A DNA stretch of 64,000 bases from Basidiobolus meristosporus CBS 931.73 (Eukaryota; Fungi; Basidiobolomycota): the NCBI GenBank assembly GCA_002104905.1, contig MCFE01000275.1, positions 1 to 64,000 of the forward strand, in the 5' to 3' direction. The stretch's first letter is position 1. The number at the start of each line of letters is the position of its first letter. This document shows, piece after piece, positions 8,206 to 57,131 of this stretch. The position numbers and the translations under genes are program-made. The notes below the pieces were generated by a model. It searched no databases, was not told the DNA's origin, and saw nothing but the letters and a program-made list of their open reading frames with translations.

Positions 8206-11200
8206 CCACTCATGAAAATGCAGTATATCCAAGAATCTTCCTTTGCCACAAAATCTATCCAGTCCTTCAGAATGCCTGCCAATATCCAGATCCCTGACTA
8301 CAGTCCTGTCCCAGTCCAAGCCCTGATTGATTCTGGTGCTTCATCCTGTTTCATTGACCAAGCATTTGTCCAGAAGCACTCTATTCCTGTTACCTTGAAA
8401 TCCTGTCCAGTCCAAGTAGAAGTTATTGATGGAAGATCACTCTCCTCTGGTGCCATTACCCATGAAACATGCTTACTTCAGCTGTCCAGTACTGCTCACA
8501 AAGAAAGAATTGCCTTCAGCATCATCAACTCACCACACTATCCTATTGTGCTTGGAAGCTCATGGCTGAGCTACCACAATCCAAGTATTGATTGGAATTC
8601 CAAGATCCTGTCATTCACCAGATCCCACTAAGTCAACTCCATGAAATCTCCAGACCCTGATAACCGTGAAAAGACTGTTGCCAACAGTTCAACAGCCCAA
8701 GATACCTTGCCAGCTGAAAGAGCCTCCTCAGCAAACATACCAGCCAAGTACCAAGAGTTTGCCCATGTCTTTGACAAGAAGAAAGCAGAACTCCTCCCTG
8801 GCCATTGGCCTTATGACTGCCCTATTGACCTTGAAGATGGAAAAGTCCCTCCATTTGGCCCAATATATAACCTCTCCCAGCCAGAGTTGAACAAACTCCA
8901 TGGTTATATTGATGAAAACCTCCAGAAGGATTTTATTCAGCACTCCAAATCACCTGCTGGAGCCCCAATCTTCTTTGTCAAGAAGAAGGATGGCACCCTC
9001 AGAATGTGTGTGGACTACTGTGCTTTGAATAAGATCACAGTCAAGAACCGCTACCCCCTGCCTCTGATCAACACACTGTTGGATCAGCTGTCTGCTGCCC
9101 AAGTCTTCACCAAGATTGACTTGAGAGGAGCTTACAATCTTGTCAGAATCAAGCCCAGTGATGAATGGAAAACTGCCTTTTGCACAAGATATTGTTACTT
9201 TGAGTACAAAGCTATGCCATTTGGCCTTACCAATGCCCCTGCTGTGTTTCAACACCTCATGAATGACATCTTGTGTGAATACCTTGACCAGTTTGTGATA
9301 ATCTACCTTGATGATATTCTCATATACTCCAAGAGCCAAGATGATCATGATGAACATGTCAAGAAAGTATTGAGAAAACTAGACTCTGCCAGTCTCTATG
9401 CCAACCTAGAGAAGTGTGAATTTGACCAGAGAGAAGTGGAATTTCTTGGTTACCTCATCAGCCCTGAGGGGACAAAAATGGACCCAAAGAAAGTTGACTC
9501 AGTCCAATCCTGAAAAACTCCAAGCTCAGTCAAGGAAGTACAATCCTTCCTGGGATTTGCCAACTTCTATTGCAGGTTCATAGCCAACTACTCCAAGATA
9601 GTCACCCCTCTGACAAAGATTACCCTGAAGAACACACCTTTTGGCTGGAATGAGGAGCAATCCAGCTCATTCAACCAACTCAAGAAATCTTTCCTGAAGG
9701 CCCCTCTGCTTGCCCACCCTGACCTTGAGAAGTAATTCATAGTGGAGACTGATACTTCTGATTTTGCCCTTGGTGCCATACTCTTGCAGTATGGTAAGGA
9801 CAATGTGTTGCACCCCATTGCATTCTACTCTCGGAAGTTTTCCCCTGCAGAGATCAACTATGATATCTATGATAAGGAGTTGCTTGCCATCATTGTAGCC
9901 TTTGAGCAATGGAGACACTACCTGGATGGTGCAAAACACAAAATCAAAGTTTTCTGTGACCATAGGAACCTTGAGTACTTTGCAAATTCCAAAGTACTAA
10001 ACCAGAGACAAGCCAGATGGTCACTCTTCCTGTCCAGCTTTGACTTTACTATCACCTATAGACCTAGTGCAAAGCAAGGAAAGCCTGATGCCCTGTCCAG
10101 AAAAAAGAAATATGCCCTGGAAGAGGGAGATAATGCCTGTTGGCAAATGGAACACCCATTGCTGAGCAAGAAACATTTTGAGATTCTTGCCACCCAGTCC
10201 TCAAGTCTTGTCATCCCTTCATTCCTAGTAAGGATATCAGAATCCCAAGCCTCTAATATGACTTCCAGTACCATCAAGAAATATCTGGAATCCCCAGTTG
10301 GGCCCCCTCCCAAGTTCCCAAACATCCAGAACCTGCATTTGGTAAACAACCTCATCTACCACAAGCAGCAGCTTTATGTCCCAGACCTTGCCACCCAGCT
10401 GGATATTATTAAGTCTTGGCATGATTCAATGGCTGCAGGCCACTTTGGCACTGCCAAAACCTTGAATGCTATCAAAAGAGATTTCTGGTGGCCTAGAATG
10501 TTAACTCTTATCAAAGAGTACATTCTGACTTGTGATATTTGCAACCATGCAAAACTAGCCAGACACCAGCCCTATGGACTTCTTCAGCCCTTGCCTATCC
10601 CAGAACACCAATGGAGATCTATATCTATGGACTTCATGACTGACCTCCCTGAGTCATGTGGCTTCAATGCTATACTTCAAGTGGCTGACTTGCTGACCAA
10701 GATGGCTCACTTTATCCCTTGCTGTAAGAACACTGATGCAAAAGAAACCGCTACGTTAGTCCTCAAGATTATTTTCCGCCTTCATGGTATCCCCAGTGAT
10801 ATTGTGTCAGATAGAGGCCCACAGTTTGTGTCCAAGTTTTGGAAACACTTCATGCAATACCTTAGTGTTCAAGTCAAACTCTCCACTGCCTTCCATCCTC
10901 AATCTGATGGCCAGACTGAAAGAATCAACCAGATTCTAGAGCAATACCTCCGGTGCTATATCAATTACCAGCAAGACAATTGGGTTGATCTACTACCAGT
11001 TGCTGAGTTTGCCTACAACAACTCAAGCCATAATGCAACCAGTTTCACACCATTCTATGCAAACCATGGATTCCACCCTCAGTTTGATATCCAGATACCA
11101 ACAAACCTAATGAGCCCACATGCTGCTGAACATGCCCAAGCAATCCAGGACATCCAGAATACCCTCAAGGAAGAGCTGTCCTTAGCTCAGGAAAGCTACA

Positions 11201-12230: not shown

Positions 12231-15200
12231 CTGGCCATTATGTCGCATGGTCAATTGCTACTAGGGCCCAACAGTTGCATTTCATTGTAGTTGGCAGTCT
12301 TCCAATAAAGTCAATTCCCTATCTTTCAAAAGGTCTTACAGTCTCCAAGGGAAAGAGTACAGCAATTCTCTGTGGTTGGCCTTGGTTGATTTGGAAATTT
12401 GGGCATGTTTTCACTAGCTTCTCAATGTCTTGTTTCATTCTGGGCCACCATGCTCTGGCTTTCACAACACTATAGGTTCCTTCAATTCCAAGGTGTCCAT
12501 ATCCATTGTGTAGCTTATGTATTAAATCCAGGCAAGAAACATCAGGGCAATCGGCAATAGAGCTTCCATCAACAATATGGTAGAGTGTTTCATCCTGTAC
12601 TACAAATTTGCTGGCTTCATCCCGGATTATCTTCTTGATATCTTCATCCACCTCATTAGGAATGGCTTGGTCCTCCAACTACTTTGGTAATAGGCTAGGC
12701 CAATCTGATTCATGCACTAAGTTGAGTTGTCCAACTTGATCTAATCCTGATAAGGCATCAGCAACCGTATTGTTTTTTTAGGGCAGTAGACAATATCCAA
12801 GTCAAATTGCTGAATGTATTCACTACATCTTCTCATTCTTGTAGAGAGTACCTGCTGAGTAAATATGTACTTGAGTAAGGTATGATCAGTCTTCACAGTG
12901 CATTTGACTCCTTCAATATGGCATCTCCACGTCTTCAAACAGTGTATTGTAGCAAGCATCTCCTTCTCATGAACTGGATAGTTTTGTTCTGCTGAGTTCA
13001 GTTTCTTGGATTCAAAGGCAACAGGGTGGTCCTTTCCCTTGTGTTCTTGGCTCAACACTCCACCAATTGCATAATCTGAAGTGTCTGTGCACATAGTAAA
13101 CTCTTTTCTGAAGTCTGGTATTCTTAAGCTTGGCAGCTTAGCAAGTTCATTCTTGACCATCTGGAAGGCAGTCTCACAAACTATGTCCCACTTGTAGGTA
13201 TTGTCTTTCTTTAGGATATCAGTTAAAGGGGCTGCAATACTTGCAAAGGACTTGACAAATCTCCAATAACAGGAAACCATTCCAAGGAATGATCTGAGCT
13301 CTGATATGCTATGGGGCTGCTTCAGATTCTTGATGACTTCAACCTTCTTAGGGTCTAAGGTTACTCCTGTGCTAGTCACTATGTGTCTCAGATATTCAAC
13401 ATGTTCCTTGAAAAATTCATACTTGGGTAGCTTGCCATAGAGCTTGTTCTCTCTTAGCTTTTACAAGACCTTTTCAATGTGCACCAAGTAATCCTCTTCT
13501 GTCTTAGTGGCTACATTGAGTTGGTCCAAGAGCTTGTCAATCCAAGGTATTGGGTACTTATTCTTCATGGTAACTGAGTTGAGGGCTCTGTAGTCAACGC
13601 ACATCCCAAGTGTTCCATTCTTCTTCTTCACAAAAAGTACTGGTGCTCCCCAGGGTGACTTGCTGGGTCTGATATATCCTTGCTCCAGTAATTGATCTAT
13701 TTGTCTCTTCATCTCTTCCAACTCCAATGGACTCATTCTATTAGGTGTCTTACTCACTGGAGGGCTATCTCCTGTTTCAGTGGTATGAACCATGGCTCTG
13801 ACTGGTGGTAGGCTTACAAGCTCTTCCAGAAATATGTCTGAGTACTCCTTCAAAAGAGTCTGGACCTTCTAGGGTACTGGAGTCAGAGAATCCTGCTGTA
13901 ATACTGCCATGAGGAACATCTGCATGCCTTTTCTTAGTGCTCTACAGAACTGTGTCTTGCTAAGCTCACTTGTCTCACACACACTGGAATTGACCATGCT
14001 GAAATCCAGTCTGGCAGGTAATAGCTCATTGGTCTTGCTGTCCTTCAGGATCTGAGTAGCATAGGTTCTCCAGTTGATTGATGGATTACAACAAAATAGC
14101 CAGGTTTTCCAAAGTACAAGGTCAAACCTACAGTTCCCATATATATAGGCCTGCATATCTTCTTTATAGTCATTGATCTTCATCCTTACTGGCTGAGTAA
14201 TACGGTTGATTATGTGAGAGTTGCCATCAACTGTTGAGAATGAGTTGATTTGGTGGGTTCTGAGTTGATTCCAGCTATCAGAGCAAATTACTCTGGCATG
14301 CCCTCATGTAATGCTCATGAGTCAATCATGATCTTGGCAGGTACTCCATTGATTACTCCATTGAAGTATAATAGCTTTCCTGAGTTTGAGGTCATCTGGG
14401 ATAGGTATTCTTCTGTCATGTGGAAGGTGAGCTCTGAGTCTTCTTCAAGTTCATCCTCCATGTTACTATGCTCCATGGCCTCAATATGGTTAAAGGTTCT
14501 TCATGGCTGGTCTCCATTTCTTCTTTGAGGGCAGTACTTTGCAATATGTCCCTGCTGGTGGCAATTGAAGCAAAGTCCTTTCTTCTTACAGTCTTCTGAG
14601 GTAGGATTCTTCTGCATAGCATCTATTTTCATTGTAACTGCTTCTGACTGTCTTCTTTCATAGTGATTGTAGCCACTCTAATAAGTCATTGTGGGTTTCC
14701 CAACTCCAAACAAAGCTGAGTCATAGTTAATGGCAATCTTGATGGCTTCTTCAGTAGTCTGAGGTCTTTGATAAATCACTTCCTTACAAGCTCTTTCTTT
14801 CAACCCATCAATAAAGTATTCAACCTGATTCAGAGGGTCCATTCTTTAAATTGGTTCAAGTAGACATCTATACTCATAGATGTACTCTTGGACCATTCCT
14901 TTTTGTCTGAGTGTCTTCAACTTTCTTCTTAGTAGTGTCTGTTGGTGTGGGGGCTCAAAGGCATTCTGAATTCCCATCACAAACTTATCCCAGGTAGCAA
15001 TTGTAGAGCATCCCATTATGGTGGCTGACCTGATCTTGTTGTGGAACCACTGCAAAGCTGCATCTGCTAGGTAAGAGGCTGAATAATGTAACTTGTGTTC
15101 TGGAGCAATTCCCTTAGCCTTGAAAGCTTCTTCAATCTGAAAGAGTCAAGTTCCCATGTTTTCATTGACTCTACCATGGTACTACTTGACCTTCACACTA

Positions 15201-15398
15201 AAGTTGCTCTTGACAGGGTTTTGCTAGCTTTGGGCCAAGGTGGTAATTCCTTGTTGCAGCAGGCTAAGGATCTGGAGTAACTGTTGCTGCTGGGCCAGGA
15301 TTTGTTGCATAGCATTCTTCCATTCATGATTTTTGGATATCTTGAGGGAGACTTCTTCTTTCTTCAGGAGGGATGTTTCTGGTTATCACTGCTGCCAA

Positions 15399-15767
15399 TG
15401 TTATAAGTCTTGGTATAAGAGTTGTAGAGGAATAGAGAGTTTAGCTAGTACTGTATTCACTAAAACTTGGGCAGATTGTTATTGAGATTACAGCAGCTCC
15501 TTATATACATTTTGCCAGATAAATTGCTGACTAATTGTATTTCCTAATGTAGGCTGTGGCTGATTACTCATTTGATTGCATCATCATCACCCTATAAGAA
15601 CCTACCTAATATATCTATTTCTGTCTGATAAGGATCTGCTGATTCATTTGCCAACTAATTTTACTGATTTGATAGATAATACTGATATACTGATAACCTA
15701 AACAAATAACTGGTTGATTTGACTAAAAACTGATCTAACTTAAATATTCTAGTAGCAGATCACAACA
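15399..15767 (-). repeat. LTR family E shared between two tandem internal regions
   Basis: PBS and gag lie on its left; PPT and integrase tail lie on its right. Confidence 0.9.
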
Positions 15768-29840: not shown

Positions 29841-32800
29841 TGTTATGATCTGCTGTTTGAATGTTTAAGTAAGATCAGTTTTTGGTAAAATCAATTAGTT
29901 ATATATTTAGCCTATCAGTATATCACTGTTATTTATCAAATCAGTAGCATTAGTCAGCAAATGAATAAGCAGATCCTTATCAGACAGAAATAGATATATT
30001 AGGTAGGATCTTATTTGGTGATGATGATGCAATCAAATGAGTAATCAGCCACAGCCTACATTAGGAGATACAATTAGTCAGCAATTGATCTGGCAAAATT
30101 TATATAAGGAGTTGCTGGAATCTCAGTAAAGATCTGTTCAAGTTTTAGTGAATACAGTAGTAGCTAAGCTCCCAAATCCTCTACAACTCTTATACCAAGA
30201 CTTGTAACATTGGTAGCAGCAATAACCAGAAACATCCCTCCTGAAGAAAGAAGAAGTCTCCCTTAAGATGTCCAAAAATCAAGAATGGAGGAATGCTATG
30301 CAACATATCCTGGCCCAGAAGCAACAGTTACTCCAGATCCTTAGCTAGCAGCAACAAGGAATGACTACCATGGCCCAAAGCCAGCAAAACCCTGTCAAGA
30401 GCAACTTTTGTATGAAGGTCAAGCAGTACCATGGTAGAGTCAATGAAAACCTGGGTACTTGGCTCTTCCAGATTGAAGAAGCTTTCAAGGCTAAGGAGAT
30501 TGCTCCAGAAAGCAAGTTACATTATGCAGCCTCTTACCTGGCAGATGCAGCTTTGCAGTGGTTCCACAACAAGATCAGGTCAGCCACCATGATGGGATGC
30601 TCTACAATTGCTACCTGGGATAAGTTTGTGACGGGAATTCAGAATGCCTTTGAGCCCGCATACCAACAGGCACTACTAAGAAGAAAGTTGAAGACACTCA
30701 GACAGAAAGGAATGGTCCAAGAGTACATCTATGAATATAGTTGTCTACTTGGGCAAATTGAAAGAATGGACCCTGTGGATCAAGTTGAATACTTTATTGT
30801 TGGGTTGAAAGAAACAACTCATAAGGAAGTGAATTATCAATGACCTCAGATTATTGAAGAAGCCATCAAGATTGCCATTGACTATGACTCAGCTATGTTT
30901 GGAGTTGGGGAGCCCACAATGAGTAATCAGAGAGGCTACAATCACTATGAAAGAAGACAATCAGAGGCAATGCCAATGGAAATAGATGCTATGCAGAAGA
31001 ATCCTACCTCATAAGACTGTAAAAAGAAAGGACTTTGCTTCAATTGCCATCAGCAGGGACATATTGCAAAGTACTACCCTCAGAGAAGAAATGGACACCA
31101 GCCATCAAACCTTTAACCATATTGAGTCCATAAGGCATAGCAGCATGGAGGATGAACTTGAAGAAGACTCAGAACTTACCTTCCATATTACAGAAGATAC
31201 CTATCCCAGATGACCTCAAGCTCAGGAAAGCTATTATACTTGAATGGAATAATCAATGGAGTACCTGCCAAGATCATGATTGACTCAGAAGCATTGCATG
31301 AGTAGATGTCAGAGCAATTTGCTTTGAAAGCTGGAATCAACTTGGAACCCACCAAATCAACTTCAGTCTCAACAGCTGATGGGAACTCTCACATAATCAA
31401 CCGTATACTCAGCCAGTAAGGATGAAGATCACCAACCGTGAAGAAGATATACAGGCCTATATATTTGGGAACTGCCAGTTTGACCTTGTACCTGGGAAAA
31501 CCTGTCTATTTTGTTGTAATCCATCAATCAACTGGAGAACCCATGCTACTCAGATCCAGAAGGACAACAGGACCCATGAGTTATTACCTGCCAGACTGGA
31601 TTTTAAATTGGCCAATTCCAGTGTGTGTTAAATAAGTGAACTTATCAAGACATAGTTCTGTAGAGTACTAAGAAAAGGCACACAGATGTTCCTCATGGAA
31701 GTATTACAGGAGGATTCCTCTACTTTAGTACCCCAGAAGGTCCAGACTCTTTTGAAGGATTGTTCAGATGTATTTCTAAAAGAGCTTGCAAACCTACCAG
31801 CAGTCAGAGATGTGGATTATGCCATAGAAACAGGAGATAACCCTCCAGTGAGTAAGACACCTTACAGAATGAGTTCATTGGAGTTGGGAGAGATGAAGAG
31901 ACAAATAGATCAGTTACTGTGGCAAGGATATATTAGACCCAGCAAGTCACCCTGGGGAGCACCAGTACTTTTTGTGAAGAAGAAGAATGGAACACTTAGG
32001 ATGTGCATTGACTACAGAGCCCTCAACTCAGTTACTGTTAAGAATAAGTGCCCCATACCTTGGATTGACAAGCTCTTGGACCAACTCAATGGAGCCACTA
32101 TTTTCAGCAAGATTGACCACATGTCAGGATACAACCAGATTATGATAAAGCCAGAAGGCATCCTTGTGACAGCATTGAGGACCAGATATGGACATTACAA
32201 GTACTTAGTCCTGAGTTTTGGCCTCACCAATGCCCCTGCAACATTCATGACCCTGATGCAGACTGTCTTCCAGGAGTACTTAGACATGTATGTCATAATC
32301 CACCTAGATGATTTATTGATATACAGCAAGACAGAAGAGGATTACTTGGTGCACATTGAAAAGGTCTTGTAAAAGCTTAGAGAGAACAAGCTCTTTGTCA
32401 AGCTACCCAAGTGTAAATTCTTCAGGGAGCATGTTGAATATCTGGGACACATAGTGACTAGCACAGGAGTAACCTTAGACCCTAAGTAGGTTCAAGTCAT
32501 CAAGAATCTGAAGCAGCCCCATAGCATATCAGAGCTCAGATCATTTCTTGCAATGGTTTCCTATTATTGAAGATTTGTCAAGTCCTTTGCAAGTATTGCA
32601 GCCACTTTAACTGATATCCTCAAGAAAGACAATACCTACCAGTGGGACATAGCTTGTAAGAATAGATCAAGTTGCACAACTCAACTTGGTGCATGAATCA
32701 GATTGGCCTAGCCTATTACAAAGTACTTGGAGGACCAAGCCATTCTTAATGAGGTGGATGAAAGATTACAAACATGCCAAAATTGCCAAATCAACCAAGA

Positions 32801-45931: not shown

Positions 45932-48900
45932 TCGTGCCAAGCGATGATAACTACAGTCGGCCTCGTATTTCGATGGCCGTATACAACTAGGATAGGTGGA
46001 TCAGCAAGTACAAGATATCATACAGTTACCCAAAAAAGAGGACGATCCAATCATGGAGCATGAGCCATAGACTAACCCCCTCTATTTACAGCCGTTTTTG
46101 TGGCCTTTTTTGTTCGAATGATCATTCCGGTGTCGGTGTCGGTGTCCCCATGGTTTTGGGCCAAGCAATTGCTAAGGCAATGCCCTTCATTAGAATGTGT
46201 AAGGTTAGCTTCACGGGCTGTCGTGGAGGCAGTAATGATCAGCGGTATACTGCGTGCCTGTGTTGCGCCTTAGCGGTATTGAGGCTCGCCCTTATTTGTG
46301 CTAATAAATTGAGTATACGAAGTGCAGCCGTCCATCCCTCTTGACCCATCATTGCACGCCCTGTCCCAAAAAAAGCAAACAAAGCAGTAACAGGGTGCCT
46401 CGGCATGTTGCCTGGCCGCCTGCACACATTGAATTCACTGGATGCATGAGTAGCCCATAACCAATCAGGTCCAGCCCATCGCCCACTCAAAGGATGTGTA
46501 ACGTGTGTTGTGGCCTGATGCCTAGCGTCGGACCGAATCACATCTGGCGATGTTCGCACCAACAGGTGTAGTGCGTTTGGGAATCTCACAGATCATGGAC
46601 TCCCAAATCGCTCCAATGGACCGATCTATTAATAGCAATGGTGAGCCTGGTGCGTTTGGGTTACCTAGGTTACAACCATGGGTGGGAGGGGTCTCTGTAG
46701 GTAAAATCCTTGATCGGAGTCATGCTCATCTGGCGTATTGGGTGCAGGAACTTTCCACAATCGAGCTAAAATAGAGTTAGAGATGCTCAAACATCGTGGT
46801 CACCAGCATGTCTGAGCTCGGCTTATACTGGTTTAATATGACCAGATGTAGTGTCTCGCAGGAGAACCCAGGAATAGTGCAATGACCTTGATGTCTCATT
46901 TGGCCATGGGATTGAGATTGAAGTCAGACCACGAGGCAAGTCATATTAACACAATCTTGGCGATGCTAAGGCATAATGCAGTGGCCCTCGATTCTTTTGT
47001 TGGTGTGTGCGGCTCAAATTAAAGGCTGGGCTTTGTCTCAGGGTCAAAATATGCCAGAGTTGCTAATAGCCGATTTGAAACCCTCCTCGTATCAGCTACA
47101 TCATAGTATTAACAAGGTTGCCGCGCTATAACTAAATAAACCCTAGGCCATTGGATAGGCCACTTCGGACTGGTGATTGGTGAGGATCTTGGCTATTATG
47201 TGTACACCCCTTTGTCTTGCGTATCATCCACTTCTCGCTGTGGATGCAATCCCATATTGATACCCATCTCCGCCCAGCATGAACAATAGGCTTGAGTTTC
47301 CATGGAAGCACGGCATTCTGGTCCAAAGTCAGTGAAGTGGCCTGGCCAAATCTTCACACGGTAACCTTTGTCATAGTTGTGAATGTGTGCATGTTTCTTT
47401 CTGCACTTTACAAAGCTAATGTGTGACACCCATTGTATTCTGGACAAGTTCATATTAAATATCTAGACTGGTATCCATTCAATTTATTGCTAGGGGTTGT
47501 CATTGGTTCTCTACCACTGATAAAGGTTTTTGGTCCCGTCCTACATAACAAAGAATCATCTTCATAAAGGAGGGAACTTGTTTGAAGGGCCATTTTAATC
47601 GCAGCAAGGGCTGTACTACCCACTTTCGATTCTCCTATTCAGTCCACGTTCCTCTCCAATTTAGAAATCCGAACCCCCAATATGTATGGAAACCATTACT
47701 TCCCGATAATTATTCAGCAAGGGAAGCTTTATATCGATGCTTTAGGAAATCCCATCGTATTACGGTGCAAGTAGGAGAAATACCTGCAGTATGAGTGCAG
47801 CCTGGTATGCTATAAATACCTCCTGACGGGCCTGTCGCTGTTGGCTTAACCATCCTCTCCAACCTCATCATAAAATTCATTCGCATCACCTTAGGCCATT
47901 CCAGAACAGAATGCTTTGTATCTATCGACTCTTTACGTTCAAACGCCATTCTAAATCAGGCTCTAAACAGAATGCTGGTTATACCTGTTTGCACAGCCTG
48001 GATTACGAGACCTACTCGACAGAGATTGCCAGGCAGGAACTAGAGACATTCATAGCCTCTCCCGCGGTCGATGCGTACCCTGATGAACAGAAAATCGAGT
48101 TTGTGAGACTAGCCGAGCTTCTTGATCAAAGTTATCAACAATTCTTCGCTGACACCACCCACATCCTCAGCTGTTAACCTCTCGAGCCCGCTAAGCGAAG
48201 TCCACTCCTAAATAAGCCACATCTCCTCATGCAAAACCTTTGTAGTTAAAGCAATGTATATCATACAAATCACTTTCCTTTCGGTGGATGATAACCCAAG
48301 CCAGCTCCACTTATTCTTACGTCGTGTATATAGCCAGCCAACGATACCTCTGTGTTTATTATTGATATATAAATCCCTATAGAACTGTTGCTTGACTTCA
48401 AGCCTTGCAAATACCACTGAAATAAATTCTCAACCTTCACCATGAACCACGATTTACCTGGACGTGCCTTCGATTGATCCCCTTATGCTGTTCATCTGCG
48501 TCAAGAGCGGATTACTCATTTCCAGCATCCCTTGGATGGGTCCCAGTCCTCCTATTCCACCATCTCCGGTGCCCAATGTGCGTGAGCATGTGTGTTGAAT
48601 TCGGACAATTGATCCTGCATTTGAATTCGGAGGTTTAGCGTGTAACACATGCCATGCGCTAGCACTCCCCACTCGGTATTGATGATAGAACTTCTACAGT
48701 AAGGTTTGGTTCCATAATATGAAATTCTGGAATGAGTGGAGGTTGAACAACGTGACCCGGGAACTCCGATTTCGAGGTTTCATGATGAAACACGGTTTCC
48801 TTAATCATCATCCAACCAAAGATCTCGGAGACAGTGATTTGGGGTATGCTCTATATAGGTGATCTGAGGGTTCCCTGATTATATTGGAGCTTGCATCCCT

Positions 48901-50307
48901 AAATTGCATATATGTGGACAGATGAAGCTTGCCAATCTAATTGTGGAATATAATCTTTGCGGAGCTGATGGATCATCAAGGGCCGACGTGACTGATCCCA
49001 CCCATGGCCCATCTACGGAGTGGTTCAACACTAGCGTGCGCTGGAAGGAGGTCCAGCCTTGCAAAAGGTGCGACAGTTGATTTACTCTAGGTGCAATCTG
49101 GCAGGCGAGTCAGATTATGTTAGCTAGATTCCAGAATTTTGATCCAAGCATAGGAAACTTCGATGGGACAATCGGCTAGATTTCGCAACGCGGTGCGTAC
49201 AGGCTATAATACACATTATTTACTGTTCTGGCAAAAATCAAGGCTGGCATGTACGATATTCCGTTGTGTGGGCCAGAACCCATTTGCCATGGAGTTTGTC
49301 GTTTGAGGAAAACCCGGACATTTGCTGACTTGACAAGGCGACGTGCAGCTGCCGAAGCCTGATCACAGATAGGGTGACTTCTAAACAGCTTTGGAGATTC
49401 TGAGCATTTAAGTGCTGTGTAAGCATTAAAACCCGGTTGTTGTTTGAAAAATCATGCGATTGTATTATACTACATAAAAATCTGTAAAGCTCACCGCTTG
49501 GTGACGCGCTGGTTTTTAATCTATCTAAGAAACACTGGCAACTCTGCATAGCGTGATGGTCAAGTGCTCTGGATTCTTCCCATCACATGAACCGAACCTG
49601 TCATTGTCAAGTTTGCAAAGGCTTTGCTTCTTACTGGGAGATAAATTCAACATTTACAATTTCCATTTGCAGGGGCGTATTATATATAGGTGCTCAAAAG
49701 CCGGATTCTTCTCTGTAGATGATATGATGGTGGAGAATCCAGTATTTCTCACCAAGCTTGAACAGTATTTGAACGTCAAAAAAATAGTGAGATAACTGCT
49801 GTACAACCTCTGCGTTCGAGATAATCTAGACTTTACAGAGAGCTGAGTGCTACCAAATACTTTTGAATCAAGGCGTTACTTCCGAGGCGAATATATAGTA
49901 GTATTTCCACATGTATGTTGTGTATAAAGGTTAATTAGTCTCCAAGATGTGTATTTATCCTCTAATGCATTCAAGCTGGACAAAGCTACCCAATTTGTAT
50001 CCCGCAGTGGCACCAATACAATTGCATGATCCATTGTTGATAAAGCTGCAGCAACCACGGTAATTCTGGAGCCCGGCCCAGTATCGTGGATGTATTAGCC
50101 ACTAATAAACTAGATTCTAAATAGATAACTGTTGGGTCTACACTGTCATTAGGATGGTACTCTCCATGTATTTCTTGTCTGCATGGTCAGGCGACGGAAT
50201 GTGGCCCATGGGGAAACTTAGTGCAATATGGTGCACTATCAATGAAGATGTGAAAGAGCATTGCTCAAAGTGGTGATTTGTATACACCATCTGATGTGTT
50301 GATGGCA

Positions 50308-50991
50308 AAACATGTAAATTTTGTAATTACACCTAAGTATTCCATTAGCTTGGTCACTTGGATTGTAGTGTATGAATCTTGGAATGTCTTGCATAAACTC
50401 TCAGTTGGGATTTACTTGTAATATTTTACTAAAATATTAGGTACCCCTTGTTGTAAAAATTCGGAATTCCACCTAAATATTCACCTAACTTAGTCACTTA
50501 GATCATTACCTTCAAATCCTAGAGAATACTGACCAAATTCCTTGTCGGGATTTACTTAGAATATTTACCCAGAACATGAAAATCAGATAAGTTGTCCAAA
50601 CAGCTCCAAACTTTGCACACATGTTCTTGGGACCTTCCTTAACCTATTCTACGTGTTTGTAATGCCAAGACCATGTAAAAGTATAAATACTACTCTTACA
50701 TTCAATAAATCATTAAGTGAAAACCACATAATCTACTTGTCCTCCCAATCACTTCCAATATCTCCAAGACTCTTACAACACCCCTAACATGAAAACTTGC
50801 TAAATTTTCCAGAGGCCCCTAATCCTGCATACATGCACTTGGGATCTCTCTCAGCTTGTTTTACATGCTTGGTTTGCCAAAACTATTCAAAAGTATCAAT
50901 AATACTTTACACTCAATAGACTATTGAGTGAAACTCACAAAATTTGTTTGCTCTGCCAATCACTCCCAATACCTCTAAAGCTCTTACAACA
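50308..50991 (+). repeat. Old solo LTR related to family A, interrupted by a younger solo LTR
   Basis: The flanks rejoin as gggatttacttgtaatattttactaaaatattaggtacccct|aacatgaaaac and align to 41448..41798; ends in ctcttacaaca. Confidence 0.7.
50449..50780 (+). repeat. Solo LTR family A, 332 bp, TSD CCCCT
   Basis: TGTTG...CAACA; CCCCT at 50444-50448 and 50781-50785. Confidence 0.95.
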
Positions 50992-53382
50992 AAACCAAGA
51001 CATGTAGTGAATATATGTCCCAGGTTGTATGTAACTCAGCTCATAGAAGGCTGTTTAGGAGGCTTAGACTGCAAATATACACAATGGTCATTTTCTTGCA
51101 AGGATTTCTCACAAAAAAGCTACAAATACCTGATGATAGTGTGGAAATCAGTATTAAGGGTACAGCTCTGAAATTTATCATTCTATAGAATTAGAAATGA
51201 ATAATGACATGGTATACATGTACTCCTAGTTGTCCTGTGTATATACAAAATACAAAGCACAGCCACGTGCTCATTGAATCTATTAAAAAGAATAGAATGT
51301 TCTAGTAAGTGGCATTACTAGAAGAAGAAATAGTTCTTTTTAAATTTCCATGCAGTTACTGTGAGTGAGCGCTGTCTCTGCTATGAGAGGAACTAGGTTG
51401 TGGCAAACATCAGAAGCAGGATATATAGAGGTAATTAGAGTAGTTACCTGTAAGATGAAAGCATTGATAGTATCAATGCCATCATAAAAGCTGCACATAA
51501 TGGTGTAGTTGCCATTATAGTTGCAAGACATTGAATAATAGAGAAATACGATGTTGAAAGGAGGATTCAAGTCCCAGAGATTTCATGCTATACTACACTT
51601 GGTACTACTTTGTTTGAGGAAATAGAGGCAAATGCACATGGAACTGTAAATATTCGATGTAAACAATGGCAGGGAATGGGAATTCTTCGGAAATTCTCAC
51701 AAGATAATCACTTTGCTAAATTGGCTCGTACTCACGCTACTTTGAAGTTAGGTAGGAGCTCGTAGCAAACGGCCAAATGGATATGGGGTAACCTATCGCC
51801 ATGTCCATTGATGAATTACGAACTGTCCAGTTGAGAAAGTGGAATATGTCTATTGAAGTTGGTATGGACAGTGTTCAATCAGCTGAAATGTTGTGTATTC
51901 TTACTCTGCCTTCGTTGTACTGGAGCCATCCAAGGAATGGATCTTTCCAAAAAAAACGCCGGATTGAGCTTTTCGCACCCATTCCCATCCTAGTTCAAGC
52001 GTGTGCTACACCAAGTTCAACAAGCCTACCAAGGCCTCGTTCTAATCCCCTTCGAAGCAAATGGCGTGATGTATCTCTGTTCAGGTTAGGAAGGTTGGTT
52101 GCGATATAAAGTGGCCTCAATAGGACCTATATGAAGCTTGAACCGGTCGTGGATAATGTTAGCCATTCGAATGTCTCGGATTCTACTCGAAACTGCCTTA
52201 ATGTGGCTCTGTTTCAGTCCCGACCTCCAAAGAACATGTATCTATGATACTATGAATGCATAGTGTGGTAAGTGAGGATTCGTTTTTGCTGGTGGGAAAA
52301 GTAGATAGGACAATGAACGAATCAGGATGCTTCTACGAATGTTAAATCCAGTTAGCTTCGTGTTTTTGCGCTTTTAAAGCAACTTCGGGATTCTCAGTTA
52401 ACCAACTGAATAAAGCACGTATAGAAGTACTCACGATATTCATCATGTGATAAATCGATCGGCAGTACACAAAACGTCGTGAATATTCGCGGTGATGAAA
52501 TCTAGCAAAGCCCAATCTCTCTAGCTTGGCCTCACTCCGCCTGCAGTTGAGAACTGGTTAACAGTAAATTACCTTTATAACGACGCTTTGCGGAGCAGAG
52601 AACATGGTAGCTGCTCTTTTTGTGACAAAGTGACTGACGCAGGTCACCCATGCTTCCTTTCGTTACCTATTGATGTTCATATTATTGCTTGAAGAGAAAC
52701 CTCGGGTGTTGGTGAGCATATCAAGCTGGATACTTTGTAGCCGAATCAGGTCGCTACTGAGCAACTATACTACTGTTAGTAGAAATGCATTACATGACAT
52801 ATGCATGGTGAGTAGCTTGGATCCTGTTGAATCGCTACCTGGAACCGGTTCGGTTTTCAAAGCATCAGCTACAGCATAGCGTCTACTCACGATTAAAATC
52901 AGCCAGACCATGGACAAGGATAGAAATACCAGAAATCGAAACAGTCCATGATCTTCTCGTGCTGGTATTCATTTATGATTATCTGGTACAACAGTGACAT
53001 GTTTGGCAAACGCAAGTGACCTTGTGCCCTTTAGGGCAAGATCTGTTAAGCTTGGTATGGTTTTGGCAAATGATCGTACATGCTAATCACGTTATTTGGG
53101 TTATATTTGTATTTTCAAGCCATTGGCGAGGGGAAATTTCTCAGACCTTTCCCATTTTGAGGATCTATGAGAAATTACTGTACCTTTCTAAAACAAGTTA
53201 GCCATTCGTAAGGAATCGCTTGCTACTAGGCAACACTCATGGAAACGTATATCAAATACAATCAGTATTGTAATAACGGCTGGAGAGAGATAACGACACT
53301 ACATCGATTGCGGTGCCCATTCGACATACAAAAGAGCAACAACTATAAAATTCCAACGAATGCCCAGGGTATTCCCATCAAA

Positions 53383-54999
53383 ATGCGCTACTCTACTCTC
53401 CTCTCCTTGATTCTTTTATCCGCCTCTAGCGTCTTCTCGGCCCCAGTTACCGAGTTTCTGGCCCGCCCTGTCCGCTACGACAACCACAAGCTGATCCAGC
53501 TGAAGCGCTCCGACGCCGCTCTAGATTTCATTAGCAAGAACAACCTGGACATCTGGCACAAGGCGTCCGATGTCCTCCATGTTCGCGCATCTCCCAAAGA
53601 CCTGGAGAGCCTTGCCGAGTTCTCCCCCGAGGTCCTGATCGAGAACATCCAGGAAAGCATTGATCTCGAGACAAAGTCGTTGAAGCAAGCTGCCCTCGCC
53701 AAACGTGCGGTGGACGATGCCACCTGGTTCCAGAGCTACCACACCTTCACCGACATTGTCCAATGGCTGCAGAATCTCTCCCAGAAGTACCCTGACCTGG
53801 TGACCCTTGTTCCTTCCATCGGCAAGACCACCCTCGGAAAGGACATCCCCGCCCTCAGGATAACCAGCAAAAACGGCGCAACAAAGAAGAAGTTCTGGTT
53901 CCAGGGACTCCAACATGCCAGGGAATGGATCGCCACCACCACCATGCAATACGTGGCCGACGGGCTTGCCTCGGGATATGCCACGGATGCGAGCACCAAG
54001 AAGCTTCTCGACGAGGCCGAGATCATCATCATTCCAGTCTCGAATCCCGATGGCTACGAATACACCTGGAATGGGGATCGTTTGTGGCGCAAGAATCGTC
54101 GCAACAACGGCGGCGGAGTCTACGGAGTAGACACGGTAAGTATCATGTTCAGGTATATGGTGAAGTGCGACCAGCCATGGGGATGTGCGCGGTGGTGGAC
54201 TGCAGTGATGGGGCAGATAAAGACTACGTGATGTAGAGCAAGGGGATATCGAGCGTTAGGGGACGTCATCGAGCCCCATACCTCTTGCTGGTAACGGCAG
54301 CTCGGCCACTCCTACGTGGAAGTCCCCCAACGGCCCACTCTATTCCATCTCTCTTGACGGGAGTGTTGCAAGGACACCCTAATGTCCACCACTGCCCTCC
54401 CCCCCACTGGTGTCGCACACTTGCCAGCAAGCAACAACCGGAATACTGAACATATTTTTGATGTGTAGAACAGAAACTGGCCTGATCATTGGAACAAAGG
54501 AGGCTCCTCTACCAATCCCCGAGATGAGACCTATATGGGACCATCCGCCGGTAGCGAGCCTGAAGTGAAGGCATTGATTAACTACTATTTCCAGCAAACT
54601 GGAATCGTGGGTGCCATTGATTACCACTCCTACAGTGAGTTGATCATGTGGCCATATGGCTGGACTTACACCGATCCCGCTACTGTGGCACCCTATACTA
54701 CATTGGCCAAGAATATGAAGAGTGCCATTCGTGGTGTAAATCCTAATGAGCAGTATGTTGCCCAACAGATCAGTGATCTGTATATTGCATCAGGCAGTGC
54801 TGCAGATTGGTTCTATAGTGATGAGGTTCTTCAGAAGCAGAAGTTCCGAAGCACTTCATTGACTGTAGAACTATCTCCCAAGCAGAATAACCCCGGATTT
54901 GTTCTTCCACCCCAGAACATCATCCCTGTAGGAAAGCAAACTTTGGCGTCTCTCAAGGTGTTCATTAACAGTGTTCTTGCCAACCCCATCAACACTTAA
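53383..54999 (+). CDS. Secreted M14A zinc carboxypeptidase A-like preproprotein (copy A); exons 53383..54135 and 54469..54999
   Basis: Signal peptide, propeptide, HAREW, RKNR, VDT|NRNW across a GTAAGT..TAG intron, DYHSY, LYIASG and VEL. Confidence 0.93.
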
Positions 55000-57056
55000 C
55001 TGATTTGAAATGAGGAACATTATCGTCGTTCCAATTAACGTATGAAACTTGAATCCTACGATTCAAAATAAATGACTTAACAGTGCTATACCTTTGTCAG
55101 ATAAATAGTAATATTCCTCAAATACTACTGCAACCTTAACCTAGCTGTACTTCAATACTGGGCCTGTACTAGTGCTATGTATGTTGCTACTCATTTTTTG
55201 ATATTGGTACGAAGGAATAGCAGTGCTATATCGAGCGAGCAATCGAAGGCATAACATACTCCTCAGATTCGAGTACCAATAGATGCACACTTCACTGCAC
55301 ACATGCCGCTACTTTTACAACAGCGGTATTAACCCTAACAGTTTGGTTCATTTTCTTTGGTGGTGTTGTTTACAAGATGTCTTCAATAATCAATTAAAAA
55401 GCATTTCTACAAGGAATGTCAGTAGAAGTATTCACATGTGATTCCTATATGATTGTTGCGTATCGGGTGGATCTAATGCGGAAATACGAAGCTCCGTGTG
55501 CATCAGCTTTTGGCCACGAATTTTCCAGCGAGTGCGTACTCTATGAATGCAATTATTGAGTGAAGTGTTTCATTGCCAACGGGCACAATATTCTCAGCCG
55601 GTAGTATGAAGTTGGATACTCCCTGCTGATCAGCAGGCGAAAGCTCTACTGCTATCGAGATGCCATGAAATCCTTGAGCTTGAGAGACATGATCACCATA
55701 GAACCAGTCGGATGAACTTCCCGAAGCGATATACAGTTTGCTAATTTGCTGAAGCTGGTACCGTTCTTGGGGATTTACATGTTGTATAGCATTTTTCATG
55801 GTTTTTCCAAGTAGAATATATTGAGAGACTGCCATGGGATCCATGTCTATCCATGCATACGGCCACATGATTAGCTCACCGTAGGAGTGGTAATCAATGG
55901 CCCCAACAATATTACCTAGTTGAAGGAAGTAGTTCATCAACGCCCTCACTTCAGGCTCGCTACCGGCGGATGGTCCCATATAGGTCTCATCTCGGGGATT
56001 GGTAGAGGAGCCTCCTTTGTTCCAATGATCAGGCCAGTTTCTGTTCTACACATCAAAAATATGTTCAGTATTCCGGTTGTTGCTTGCTGGCAAGTGTGCG
56101 ACACCAGTGGGGGGGAGGGCAGTGGTGGACATTAGGTTGTCCTTGCAACACTCCCGTCAAGAGAGATGGAATAGAGTGGGCCGTTGGGGGACTTCGACGT
56201 AGGAGTGGCCGAGCTGCCGTTACCAGCAAGAGGTATGGGGCTCGATGACGTCCCCTAACGCTCGATATCCCCTTGCTCTACATCACGTAGTCTTTATCTG
56301 CCCCATCACTGCAGTCCACCACCGCGCACATCCCCATGGCTGGTCGCACTTCACCATATACCTGAACATGATACTTACCGTGTCTACTCCGTAGACTCCG
56401 CCGCCGTTGTTGCGACGATTCTTGCGCCACAAACGATCCCCATTCCAGGTGTATTCGTAGCCATCGGGATTCGAGACTGGAATGATGATGATCTCGGCCT
56501 CGTCGAGAAGCTTCTTGGTGCTCGCATCCGTGGCATATCCCGAGGCAAGCCCGTCGGCCACGTATTGCATGGTGGTGGTGGCGATCCATTCCCTGGCATG
56601 TTGGAGTCCCTGGAACCAGAACTTCTTCTTTGTTGCGCCGTTTTTGCTGGTTATCCTGAGGGCGGGGATGTCCTTTCCGAGGGTGGTCTTGCCGATGGAA
56701 GGAACAAGGGTCACCAGGTCAGGGTACTTCTGGGAGAGATTCTGCAGCCATTGGACAATGTCGGTGAAGGTGTGGTAGCTCTGGAACCAGGTGGCATCGT
56801 CCACCGCACGTTTGGCGAGGGCAGCTTGCTTCAACGACTTTGTCTCGAGATCAATGCTTTCCTGGATGTTCTCGATCAGGACCTCGGGGGAGAACTCGGC
56901 AAGGCTCTCCAGGTCTTTGGGAGATGCGCGAACATGGAGGACATCGGACGCCTTGTGCCAGATGTCCAGGTTGTTCTTGCTAATGAAATCTAGAGCGGCG
57001 TCGGAGCGCTTCAGCTGGATCAGCTTGTGGTTGTCGTAGCGGACAGGGCGGGCCAG
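53458..57056. repeat. 1111-bp inverted repeat pair (53458..54568 and 55946..57056), spacer 1377 bp
   Basis: Base-for-base reverse complement; I found only two differences, both in the intron. Confidence 0.95.
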
Positions 57057-57131
57057 GAAGTCAGTAATCGGAACCGATAAGGTAGATACTATTAATGTGA
57101 TGAGACACAAGGTGAAAACTATCATGCGCAT
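55503..57131 (-). CDS. Secreted M14A zinc carboxypeptidase (copy B); exons 57131..56379 and 56045..55503
   Basis: Same motifs and same 333-nt intron as copy A; it has its own signal peptide and a divergent C-terminal region of about 145 aa. Confidence 0.93.

What the first reader, a model, noticed from the sequence alone, without database searches (positions are those of the whole stretch)
53383..57131. Convergent carboxypeptidase pair joined by a 1.1-kb near-identical inverted tract: gene-conversion or invertible cassette
Seen: two tail-to-tail M14A genes are nearly identical over 53458..54568 versus 55946..57056 (two differences found), including a whole 333-nt intron. Signal peptides, promoters and the C-terminal ~145 aa are old (about 55% aa identity by manual alignment), and the boundaries are abrupt and lie inside exons. 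Inference: recent gene conversion between ancient paralogues. Geometrically, a crossover in the repeat would flip the 1377-bp spacer and swap which promoter/signal peptide drives which catalytic C-half while keeping both ORFs intact, a shufflon-like switch I do not know of for fungal peptidases. Read-through transcription would also fold into a 1.1-kb hairpin.
Basis: partly seen in the sequence, partly recalled or inferred. Interest (0 to 1): 0.8.

Follow-up and report, generated by a model that had tools for sequence, protein, structure and literature searches.

The report
Gene conversion between inverted carboxypeptidase paralogues
Two old, tail-to-tail carboxypeptidase genes of the fungus Basidiobolus meristosporus have had 1.1 kb of their front halves, intron included, copied from one to the other, probably repeatedly; this is a clean case of an ordinary process, and no data show that the DNA between them flips.

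Summary
Window 53458-54568 and 55946-57056 are reverse complements over 1111 bp with two mismatches, both in a 333-nt intron. The flanks are about 60% identical or unalignable. The window is Basidiobolus meristosporus CBS 931.73 (MCFE01000275.1, a PacBio assembly).

The genes are convergent M14A procarboxypeptidases. Trees disagree between partitions. Gene A is "A-type" throughout. Gene B has a long-branch "B-type" C-half and a unique signal peptide, but carries A-type sequence in the tract. So the tract is a non-allelic gene conversion, with A as donor.

New here: the tract is compositionally odd. Its GC3 is 0.75, against 0.48-0.57 in five paralogues and about 0.47 in the genes' own C-halves. 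It shows an AT-to-GC substitution excess and has a GC-rich intron. This suggests long-running GC-biased conversion, as in sex-chromosome palindromes, rather than a single event (about 60:40).

The flip-flop geometry is correct, but it is only an expected by-product of homologous recombination. No recombinase lies nearby, and orientation cannot be tested here.

The scan read this same stretch in an overlapping window. Its notes also list similar inverted pairs elsewhere in this genome (DPP4, PMA1, Zn2Cys6 and others).

Verdict: real, ordinary in kind, low-to-moderate interest.

The parts
53383..54135 (+). Gene A, exon 1 (251 codons): signal peptide, weak pro-segment match, and the N-terminal part of the M14 catalytic domain with the HxxE zinc motif
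   Evidence: Pfam PF00246 at E 1.8e-40 and a weak PF02244 match at E 0.002. The exon is the front of partial NCBI model P0006. The signal-peptide region is 68-75% identical to the other paralogues.
54136..54468 (+). Gene A intron, 333 nt, GT..AG, 54% GC. It holds both arm mismatches (54318, 54377)
   Evidence: The intron site is shared by all seven paralogues. The other introns are 60-140 nt and 24-38% GC. It has no other copy in the DNA held, no Rfam match, and a fold z-score of -1.7.
54469..54999 (+). Gene A, exon 2 (176 codons plus stop). The first 100 nt lie in the tract; the rest is the A-type C-half
   Evidence: Pfam PF00246, profile positions 130-285. The C-half is 90-92% identical in protein to P0002, P0003 and P0005.
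53458..54568 (+). Conversion tract, arm 1 (1111 bp): most of exon 1, the whole intron and 33 codons of exon 2
   Evidence: Two mismatches against arm 2. GC3 is 0.752 in the exon-1 part. It is the GC-richest kilobase of the window.
54569..55945 (.). Spacer (1377 bp) between the arms: C-half of A (54569-54999), 503-bp intergenic stretch (55000-55502), and C-half of B (55503-55945, minus strand)
   Evidence: A and B are 60% identical in DNA here, with pS 0.83 and pN 0.28. No further repeat is present.
55946..57056 (-). Conversion tract, arm 2 (1111 bp), inside gene B
   Evidence: The sequence is A-type: sister to P0005 with 99/99 support.
55503..56045 (-). Gene B, exon 2 (180 codons plus stop). 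Its C-half is B-type and sits on a long branch
   Evidence: Pfam PF00246. Its best relatives are only 63% identical (P0004, P0009). Terminal branch 0.61-0.93, against 0-0.3 for the other B-types. The reading frame is intact.
56046..56378 (-). Gene B intron, 333 nt, 99.4% identical to the intron of A
56379..57131 (-). Gene B, exon 1 (251 codons). Its signal-peptide codons (57057-57131) resemble no other paralogue
   Evidence: P0001 equals exon 1 plus exon 2 of B. The signal-peptide region is 39-47% identical in DNA to all others.

Best explanation
A and B are two anciently diverged, convergently transcribed M14A procarboxypeptidase genes. Together they form a small natural palindrome.

The 1.1-kb arms cover part of the pro-segment region, the first roughly 60% of the catalytic domain and the intron. 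They are kept alike by intrachromosomal non-allelic gene conversion at the DNA level. A-type sequence, native to gene A, has overwritten the matching part of the B-type gene B. The last event was very recent, leaving 2 differences in 1111 bp.

The edges are probably held where homology ends. On one side that is B's unrelated signal-peptide codons. On the other it is the 40%-diverged C-halves. Selection for two different specificity halves may also play a part. This step is inference.

Because the tract alone is strongly GC-enriched, I infer that conversion has recurred for a long time and is GC-biased. This is the same process that shapes mammalian sex-chromosome palindromes.

Occasional crossovers in the arms would invert the spacer and swap the two C-halves between promoters. 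That would be a by-product, not a programmed switch.

Shown: the tract itself, the disagreement between trees, the donor type and the composition anomaly. Inferred: recurrence, GC bias as the cause, and what sets the boundaries.

Confidence that this is gene conversion is about 0.9. Confidence in the full statement, including recurrent GC-biased conversion, is about 0.6.
For: 1. Tract and edges. 1111 bp carry 2 mismatches, both intronic. Synonymous sites are identical, and the flanks drop abruptly.

2. Age of the paralogues. Synonymous sites are saturated between every pair of paralogues (pS 0.57-0.87). In the A-B C-half pS is 0.83; in the tract it is 0.

3. Disagreement between trees. In the tract A equals B, and the pair is sister to P0005 (99/99). 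In the C-half A joins the A-types (100/99 in DNA, 94/96 in protein), while B lies outside with P0009 and P0004. An AU test rejects A+B there at p 0.0012. B also shares a 6-nt insertion with the B-types (read by eye).

4. DNA-level mechanism. The intron lies inside the tract, so a cDNA-mediated event is excluded.

5. Composition.
- GC3 of the tract's exon-1 part is 0.752, against 0.48-0.57 in five paralogues. The C-halves of A and B are 0.50 and 0.45.
- 49 other long open frames from 106 kb of this genome average 0.504 (sd 0.075, maximum 0.667).
- The tract is the GC-richest kilobase of the window, 0.551 against 0.415.
- A change-point scan finds a GC3 step only in A and B. The high stretch runs to about 54480 in both and starts at 53454 in B; in A it also covers the signal-peptide codons. 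No shuffle of 300 reached the observed value, and the paralogues show no such step.
- Lineage-specific changes on the tract are 9 AT-to-GC against 2 GC-to-AT under the strict rule, and 21 against 8 under the relaxed rule. Every other lineage leans the other way. Fisher p is 0.0026 and 0.0002.
- IQ-TREE flags A as compositionally deviant in the tract alignment only.
- The intron is 54% GC, against 24-38% in the paralogues' introns.

6. Assembly. The genome was sequenced with PacBio (PMC7466969), so single reads can span the 3.7-kb structure.

7. Precedent. Palindrome arms that convert arm-to-arm are GC-enriched relative to their flanks (PMC8981503; PMC3723533).
Against: - GC enrichment and tract do not match perfectly. 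The last 100 nt of the tract (33 codons of exon 2) have an ordinary GC3 of 0.52, while A's own signal-peptide codons outside the tract are 0.64. GC-richness could therefore be a property of A's exon 1 and intron that predates a single conversion.
- B's GC3 step is not independent evidence, because B's tract is a copy of A's.
- The polarised counts rest on parsimony among paralogues that are saturated at silent sites.
- The intron is also about 200-270 nt longer than in the paralogues. GC bias does not explain that.
- No orthologous locus in a second strain or species could be found, so concerted evolution across a speciation event is not shown for this pair.
- Starting a conversion between halves only about 75% identical is mechanistically disfavoured. 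This argues for an early start, but it is not evidence.
Confidence: 0.6

Rival explanations
1. A single, recent gene conversion from A to B, with no long history of exchange. On this view the GC-rich exon 1 and intron are an older peculiarity of gene A, for example from proximity to an allelic recombination hotspot at its 5' end, and were simply copied once.
For: Only two differences separate the arms. GC3 enrichment covers A's signal-peptide codons outside the tract and stops about 90 nt before the tract's 3' end. All paralogues show a mild 5'-to-3' decline in GC3.
Against: None of five paralogues and none of 49 other long frames reaches such a GC3, so a separate cause must be invented for A alone. 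A first conversion between sequences that are today about 75% identical, as A is to P0009, would be a strongly disfavoured homeologous event. The same scan's notes list many similar pairs in this genome, which points to a frequent process.
Confidence: 0.3
2. An assembly or polishing artefact. On this view gene B really has a divergent 5' half, and the consensus was homogenised by reads mapped to the wrong copy.
For: No independent assembly or read set could be examined. P0001 and P0006 occur on one contig only. Many similar tracts are noted in this one assembly.
Against: The assembly is PacBio, and long reads span the whole 3.7-kb structure and its unique flanks. Paralogues 75-80% identical do not cross-map. 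Mis-polishing gives mosaics, not a 1111-bp block with two intronic differences and single-base edges. Both reading frames and the splice sites stay intact.
Confidence: 0.04
3. A programmed or regulated invertible cassette, shufflon-like or flip-flop. On this view the cell flips the 1377-bp spacer to change which promoter and signal peptide drives which specificity half.
For: The geometry allows it and keeps both frames. The un-converted C-halves carry His196, Tyr248, Glu270 and the S1' pocket, with residue 255 Ala in A and Ser in B (motifs read; residue numbering from established knowledge of bovine carboxypeptidase A). Fungal flip-flop inversion between inverted repeats exists in Ogataea polymorpha (PMC5720833). 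A paralogous carboxypeptidase gene sits in an inverted-repeat bracket conserved between species.
Against: No recombinase or transposase domain lies within 10 kb. The arms are long plain homology. Only one orientation is assembled, and it is the parental one. The mature enzymes would be the same in either state, so only promoter linkage would change. No expression or read data exist.
Confidence: 0.03
4. Identity maintained by purifying selection on the protein, or a recent whole-gene duplication followed by fast divergence of the ends.
For: The N-half is the more conserved half across the family, at 77-88% protein identity.
Against: Synonymous sites and a 333-nt intron are identical, while all other paralogue pairs are saturated at silent sites in the same region. 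B's C-half groups away from A (AU p 0.0012). The flanks show silent-site saturation, not recent divergence.
Confidence: 0.01

Closest known systems
Sex-chromosome palindromes with arm-to-arm gene conversion (human Y P1-P8; primate and mouse X palindromes)
   Same: Inverted arms more than 99.8% identical around a unique spacer. Identity is kept by intrachromosomal conversion. The arms are GC-enriched relative to their flanks, with AT-to-GC biased replacement. Spacer inversion occurs as a rare by-product (PMC3723533, PMC8981503).
   Different: The arms here are 1.1 kb, not 9 kb to 1.45 Mb. They hold only part of a gene, so the two genes stay different in their signal peptides and C-halves. The organism is an early-diverging fungus and the locus has no sex-chromosome context. 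Conservation of the palindrome across species is not shown.
Partial interlocus gene conversion between adjacent inverted paralogues (for example the Drosophila Hsp70Aa/Ab pair; own knowledge), and the other pairs noted in this same genome
   Same: A sharply bounded tract that includes silent sites and introns, inside older diverged genes, with trees that disagree between the tract and the flanks.
   Different: Here the donor lineage can be named (A-type), and the tract carries a clear composition shift.
Bacterial shufflons and inverting hsdS or pilV systems (R64 Rci/sfx and similar; own knowledge)
   Same: A constant N-terminal part with alternative C-terminal parts. Inverted repeats lie inside coding sequence, so an inversion swaps C-termini in frame.
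   Different: Those systems use a dedicated site-specific recombinase and short specific sites, and both orientations are seen in cultures. Here there is no recombinase, the homology is 1.1 kb, and only one orientation is known.
Flip-flop mating-type switching in Ogataea polymorpha and Komagataella phaffii
   Same: A fungal chromosome segment bracketed by inverted repeats that inverts by homologous recombination (PMC5720833, PMC6692504).
   Different: There the inversion is induced, and a position effect (centromeric silencing) makes orientation matter. No such position effect or induction is known here.

Membership tests
Non-allelic (interlocus) gene conversion tract | A block of near-identity with abrupt edges inside otherwise diverged paralogues | tested here: met
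   1109 of 1111 bases match, against about 60% in the flanks. Identity past the 3' edge is no higher than against other paralogues.
Non-allelic (interlocus) gene conversion tract | Identity extends to silent sites and non-coding sequence, so it is not due to selection on the protein | tested here: met
   pS is 0 in the tract and 0.83 in the C-half. The 333-nt intron is 99.4% identical.
Non-allelic (interlocus) gene conversion tract | The tract and the flanks give different trees | tested here: met
   In the tract A+B join P0005 at 99/99. In the C-half B lies outside the A-type clade (100/99). AU p 0.0012.
Palindrome maintained by recurrent arm-to-arm conversion | Arms GC-enriched relative to flanks and to non-converting homologues, with an AT-to-GC excess | tested here: met
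   GC3 is 0.752 against 0.48-0.57. AT-to-GC against GC-to-AT is 21:8, against 33:71 in the pooled A-type relatives (Fisher p 0.0002). Change-point scan 0 of 300 shuffles. Caveat: the match to the tract edges is imperfect.
Palindrome maintained by recurrent arm-to-arm conversion | Arms more alike within a species than between species at the orthologous locus (concerted evolution) | not testable with these tools
   No orthologous A/B locus was found. The B. ranarum contigs L002, L003 and L006 share no flanks with the window. No closer relative of B's C-half exists in the protein collection.
Shufflon or site-specific invertible cassette | A dedicated site-specific recombinase encoded at or near the locus | tested here: not met
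   Called genes within 10 kb are THOC2, SBF-like, EF-hand, the two M14 genes and adh_short. ORFs in the 7.4-kb gene-free gap have no Pfam match.
Shufflon or site-specific invertible cassette | Short specific crossover sites rather than long homology | tested here: not met
   The only repeat is the 1.1-kb homologous tract.
Shufflon or site-specific invertible cassette | Both orientations present in a population of cells | not testable with these tools
   No reads and no second assembly are available.
MEROPS M14A metallocarboxypeptidase (A/B type) | Peptidase_M14 domain, with carboxypeptidase A-type enzymes as closest solved relatives | tested here: met
   PF00246 at E 1e-33 to 1e-40 on all four exons. 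The best PDB matches are CPA4, CPA2 and CPA1, at E 1e-50 to 1e-45.
MEROPS M14A metallocarboxypeptidase (A/B type) | Zinc ligands His69, Glu72 and His196, plus Arg127, Asn144, Arg145, Tyr248 and Glu270 | tested here: met
   The motifs HAREW, WRKNR, NRNW, DYHSY, LYIASG and VELSP are present in both genes. Residue numbering comes from established knowledge of bovine carboxypeptidase A, not from a structural alignment made here.
MEROPS M14A metallocarboxypeptidase (A/B type) | Signal peptide and N-terminal activation pro-segment | tested here: inconclusive
   Both genes have hydrophobic N-termini. Propep_M14 PF02244 scores only 18.6 bits, below the cut-off of 22.1. The family is detected in paralogues P0008 and P0010.

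The most novel reading that the evidence does not exclude
Homologous recombination in the 1.1-kb arms flips the 1377-bp spacer often enough that both isomers coexist within or between strains. This would re-pair two differently regulated promoter and signal-peptide units with two specificity halves, Ala255-type and Ser255-type. The carboxypeptidase family would then use inverted-repeat brackets more generally: a paralogue is enclosed by a 198-nt inverted repeat conserved between B. meristosporus and B. ranarum. That would be a recombination-driven expression switch for secreted peptidases in an early-diverging fungus.
Probability: 0.07. Interest if true: 0.7.

Novelty: new member of a known kind. 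Interest (0 to 1): 0.3.

Why it matters
In kind this is ordinary. Gene conversion between neighbouring inverted paralogues is well known, and the scan's notes list many such pairs in this same genome. Three points give it modest value.

- It is an unusually clean partial-gene case. The converted part is the "constant" half: the pro-segment region, the first two zinc ligands and the carboxylate-anchoring residues. The untouched part holds the third zinc ligand, the catalytic Glu and the whole S1' specificity pocket. Conversion and divergence therefore partition one enzyme into a shared half and a specific half.

- The tract's strong GC3 excess is a candidate footprint of GC-biased gene conversion in a zoopagomycete fungus. 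To my knowledge this bias has not been documented in that group. The many other tracts in this genome would allow a proper paired test.

- It is a practical warning. Such tracts mislead orthology calls and gene trees, break short-read assemblies, and let reads map to either copy.

Tried and rejected
- Orthologous locus in B. ranarum. The contigs with P0002, P0003 and P0004 (L002, L003, L006) share nothing with the window outside the coding sequence. The ends of L003 and L006 do not overlap, so a convergent pair there is neither shown nor excluded.

- A closer relative of B's C-half. A region search of P0001, residues 285-431, found nothing above 63% identity. B's native N-half therefore cannot be reconstructed.

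- An RNA gene or repeat in the long intron. There is no Rfam match at E up to 1, no other copy in the window or loci, and the fold z-score is only -1.7.

- A decaying identity gradient beyond the tract, which would show older and longer tracts. None was found.

- The tandem SPRY genes in L004 as an independent test of GC bias. Coding and non-coding sequence are confounded there, and a recent duplication is possible, so the test was not informative.

- A recombinase or transposase near the locus. None was found.

- Purifying selection, a cDNA-mediated event and a recent whole-gene duplication are rejected by the intron and silent-site identity and by the trees.

One Pfam call failed on a frame containing stops and was repeated without it.

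- The spliced protein of gene A was never joined or submitted. Its exons were searched separately by reference, and each partition was analysed on its own. For gene B the database protein P0001 served as the full-length sequence.

- The large representative-protein search, structure prediction and complex prediction were not used, because no claim here depends on them.
Full report
**Where the window comes from.** A protein search with exon 1 of gene A returned Basidiobolus meristosporus CBS 931.73 proteins at 96-100% identity. The contig carrying P0001 is GCA_002104905.1 MCFE01000275.1, 105,677 bp. Gene B sits there at 55503-57131, the same coordinates as in the window. A paper that used this genome states it was sequenced with PacBio by Mondo et al. 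2017 (PMC7466969).

**The observation.**
- The repeat finder gives a single inverted pair in 52-58.5 kb and none other within 45.9-64 kb.
- In the ungapped register, 53458-54568 pairs with 57056-55946 over 1111 bp with two mismatches, 54318/56196 and 54377/56137.
- Gene A (+) has exon 1 at 53383-54135, a GT..AG intron at 54136-54468 (333 nt) and exon 2 at 54469-54999.
- Gene B (-) has exon 1 at 57131-56379, an intron at 56378-56046 and exon 2 at 56045-55503.
- The NCBI protein P0001 equals the spliced model of B exactly. A corresponds to the partial model P0006.
- Both mismatches are intronic, so the exonic part of the tract is identical.
- Outside the tract, the signal-peptide codons are 32% identical and the promoters cannot be aligned.
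- The C-halves are 60% identical in DNA and 56% in protein. BLASTP over the whole of exon 2, including the identical 33 residues, gives 65%.
- The spacer is 1377 bp.

**What the genes are.** All four exons match Pfam Peptidase_M14 (E 1e-33 to 1e-40). The nearest solved structures are carboxypeptidases A4, A2 and A1. A weak pro-segment match falls below Pfam's cut-off.

The motifs for the zinc ligands and catalytic residues are present in both genes (numbering from established knowledge of bovine carboxypeptidase A).
- The tract ends 20 residues before His196.
- The converted part therefore holds His69, Glu72, Arg127, Asn144 and Arg145.
- The unconverted C-half holds His196, Tyr248, Glu270 and the S1' pocket.
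- By motif, residue 255 is Ala in A and Ser in B.

**The family and the trees.** Five close paralogues were fetched with their DNA:
- P0005 and P0009 from B. meristosporus (loci L004 and L005);
- P0002, P0003 and P0004 from B. ranarum (loci L002, L003 and L006).

All have one intron at the same site, 60-140 nt and 24-38% GC. Silent sites are saturated between every pair (pS 0.57-0.87), so all these duplications are old.

| Partition | Result |
|---|---|
| C-half, DNA tree | A groups with P0002, P0003 and P0005 ("A-type") at 100/99 |
| C-half, protein tree rooted with distant outgroups | A-type clade at 94/96 |
| C-half, position of B | Outside the A-types with P0009 and P0004 ("B-type"), on a long branch; B shares their 6-nt insertion (by eye) |
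| C-half, AU test | Rejects an A+B clade, p 0.0012 |
| Tract | A equals B, and the pair is sister to P0005 at 99/99, inside the A-type side |

Gene A is A-type in its signal peptide, tract and C-half. The tract is therefore native to A and foreign to B. This is gene conversion with A as the donor lineage. Because the intron is included, the event was DNA-templated and not cDNA-mediated.

B's own parts are odd. Its signal-peptide codons resemble no paralogue. Its C-half has no relative above 63% identity. It is nevertheless an open frame with all catalytic motifs, and pN (0.27) is far below pS (about 0.8). So it looks functional but fast-evolving.

**The composition anomaly.**
- The exon-1 part of the tract has a GC3 of 0.752 in A and B, against 0.48-0.57 in the same codons of all five paralogues. 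The C-halves of A and B are ordinary, at 0.50 and 0.45.
- Forty-nine other long open frames from 106 kb of this genome average 0.504 (sd 0.075, maximum 0.667).
- The tract is the GC-richest kilobase of the whole window, 0.551 against 0.415.
- A two-rate change-point scan finds a significant GC3 step only in A and B. The high stretch is 53454-54480 in B. A drops to 0.48 from 54483. No shuffle of 300 reached the observed value, and the paralogues give only the values expected of shuffles.
- Sites where the tract differs from otherwise unanimous paralogues are 9 AT-to-GC against 2 GC-to-AT under the strict rule, and 21 against 8 under the relaxed rule. All other lineages lean the other way. Fisher p is 0.0026 and 0.0002.
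- IQ-TREE's composition test flags A in the tract alignment only.
- The intron is 54% GC.

Arm-to-arm converting palindromes of primate sex chromosomes show this same pattern (PMC8981503; PMC3723533). I therefore read the pair as a small palindrome under long-running, GC-biased conversion.

Caveats:
- The last 100 nt of the tract are not GC3-enriched, and A's signal-peptide codons are mildly so. The match to the present tract edges is therefore approximate.
- B's step exists by construction, because its tract is a copy of A's.
- Parsimony among saturated sequences is crude.
- The intron is also about 200-270 nt longer than in its paralogues, which GC bias does not explain.

I put recurrent GC-biased conversion at about 0.6 and a single recent event at about 0.3.

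**The switch idea.** A crossover within the arms would invert 54569-55945. Recombination that converts inverted repeats is sometimes resolved as a crossover, so rare or historical inversions are to be expected, as seen in the human P6 palindrome (PMC3723533).

Nothing suggests a programmed system:
- there is no recombinase domain among neighbouring genes or gap ORFs;
- there are no short specific sites;
- the assembled state is the parental one;
- the mature enzymes would be the same in both states, with only promoter linkage changing.

Regulated flip-flop by inverted repeats does exist in fungi, in Ogataea polymorpha (PMC5720833). It relies there on a position effect for which there is no hint here. 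The read-through hairpin is a geometric truth without data.

**Artefact.** PacBio reads span the structure. Sequences 75-80% identical do not cross-map. Mis-polishing would not give a block with single-base edges and intact splice sites. I give this about 0.04. It can only be settled with the raw reads.

**Context from the scan.** The same stretch was read in an overlapping window under a flip-flop title. The scan's notes also list near-identical cores inside old inverted pairs elsewhere in this genome: DPP4, Zn2Cys6, PMA1, GSIII, LEA-like, Ras2 and deacetylase. Three of them were followed up and judged to be gene conversion. I did not check those. They suggest a frequent process in this fungus, or, less likely, a systematic feature of this assembly.

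**Seen in passing.**
- The B-type paralogue P0009 in L005 lies next to an EF-hand gene paralogous to the one beside gene B, but in the opposite relative orientation. It is bracketed by a 198-nt inverted repeat whose arms are 97% complementary.
- The same element forms both ends of the 2770-bp B. ranarum contig that carries the matching B-type gene P0004. It is about 83% identical between species. The promoter region between arm and gene cannot be aligned, and silent sites are saturated. The arms share species-specific states. No Rfam family matches.
- This is a conserved inverted-repeat bracket around a whole carboxypeptidase gene, with signs of concerted evolution. Inverting it would reconcile the two loci. 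It deserves its own look.
- L005 also holds an unannotated third, distant carboxypeptidase copy.
- L004 has three tandem SPRY genes with roughly 600-700 bp of near-identical sequence.

**Verdict.** The gene-conversion inference is supported and refined: the donor is A-type, and conversion is probably recurrent and GC-biased. The switch remains an untested by-product hypothesis. This is a new member of a known kind, with interest 0.3.

Noticed in passing
L005 8863-9060 and 11144-11341 (MCFE01000493.1); L006 1-150 and 2632-2770 (B. ranarum JASJQH010009870.1): The B-type carboxypeptidase paralogue (P0009 in B. meristosporus, P0004 in B. ranarum) is bracketed in both species by the same roughly 200-nt inverted repeat. 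The arms are 97% alike within B. meristosporus and about 83% alike between species. The promoter region between arm and gene cannot be aligned, and silent sites are saturated. The arms share species-specific states, which indicates concerted evolution. The B. ranarum contig ends inside both arms. No Rfam match was found. The gene's orientation relative to the neighbouring EF-hand gene is opposite to that of gene B in the window.
   Followed up: partly
L005 12746-14147 (+): An unannotated third carboxypeptidase copy lies downstream of the EF-hand gene. It is 45-50% identical in protein to A and B. It has frame changes that may be extra introns and one in-frame stop in the read-through, so it could be a gene or a pseudogene.
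   Followed up: partly
window 54136-54468 and 56046-56378: The shared intron is 333 nt and 54% GC. The same intron in five paralogues is 60-140 nt and 24-38% GC. The extra 200-270 nt have no other copy in the DNA held, no Rfam match and no long ORF. Their origin is unexplained.
   Followed up: partly
L004 12012-12730, 13566-14284, 15522-16241 (MCFE01000498.1): Three tandem SPRY-domain genes share roughly 600-700 bp of 97-100% identical sequence inside diverged flanks. This is either homogenisation in direct orientation or a recent tandem duplication. A 31-bp tandem array lies at 9237-9667, just upstream of P0005.
   Followed up: partly
window 45932-53382: A 7.4-kb stretch upstream of gene A has no called gene. 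It holds dispersed repeats: 50316-50991 matches L004 3234-3584 at up to 88%, and 47910-48143 matches L005 2313-2546 at 71% in DNA and 77% when translated. ORFs of 90 aa or more have no Pfam match.
   Followed up: partly
window 4200-42200: There are many dispersed direct and inverted repeats of 150-1300 nt at 78-97% identity, for example 14500-15767 against 29841-31108 at 91%. This looks like a transposable-element-rich block and was not examined.
   Followed up: no
genome-wide (scan notes): The scan's notes list many other old inverted paralogue pairs with near-identical cores in this genome: DPP4, Zn2Cys6, GSIII, LEA-like, PMA1, deacetylase and Ras2. Taken together they may say more about B. 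meristosporus than any single case. A paired test of GC3 in tract against flank would be easy.
   Followed up: no
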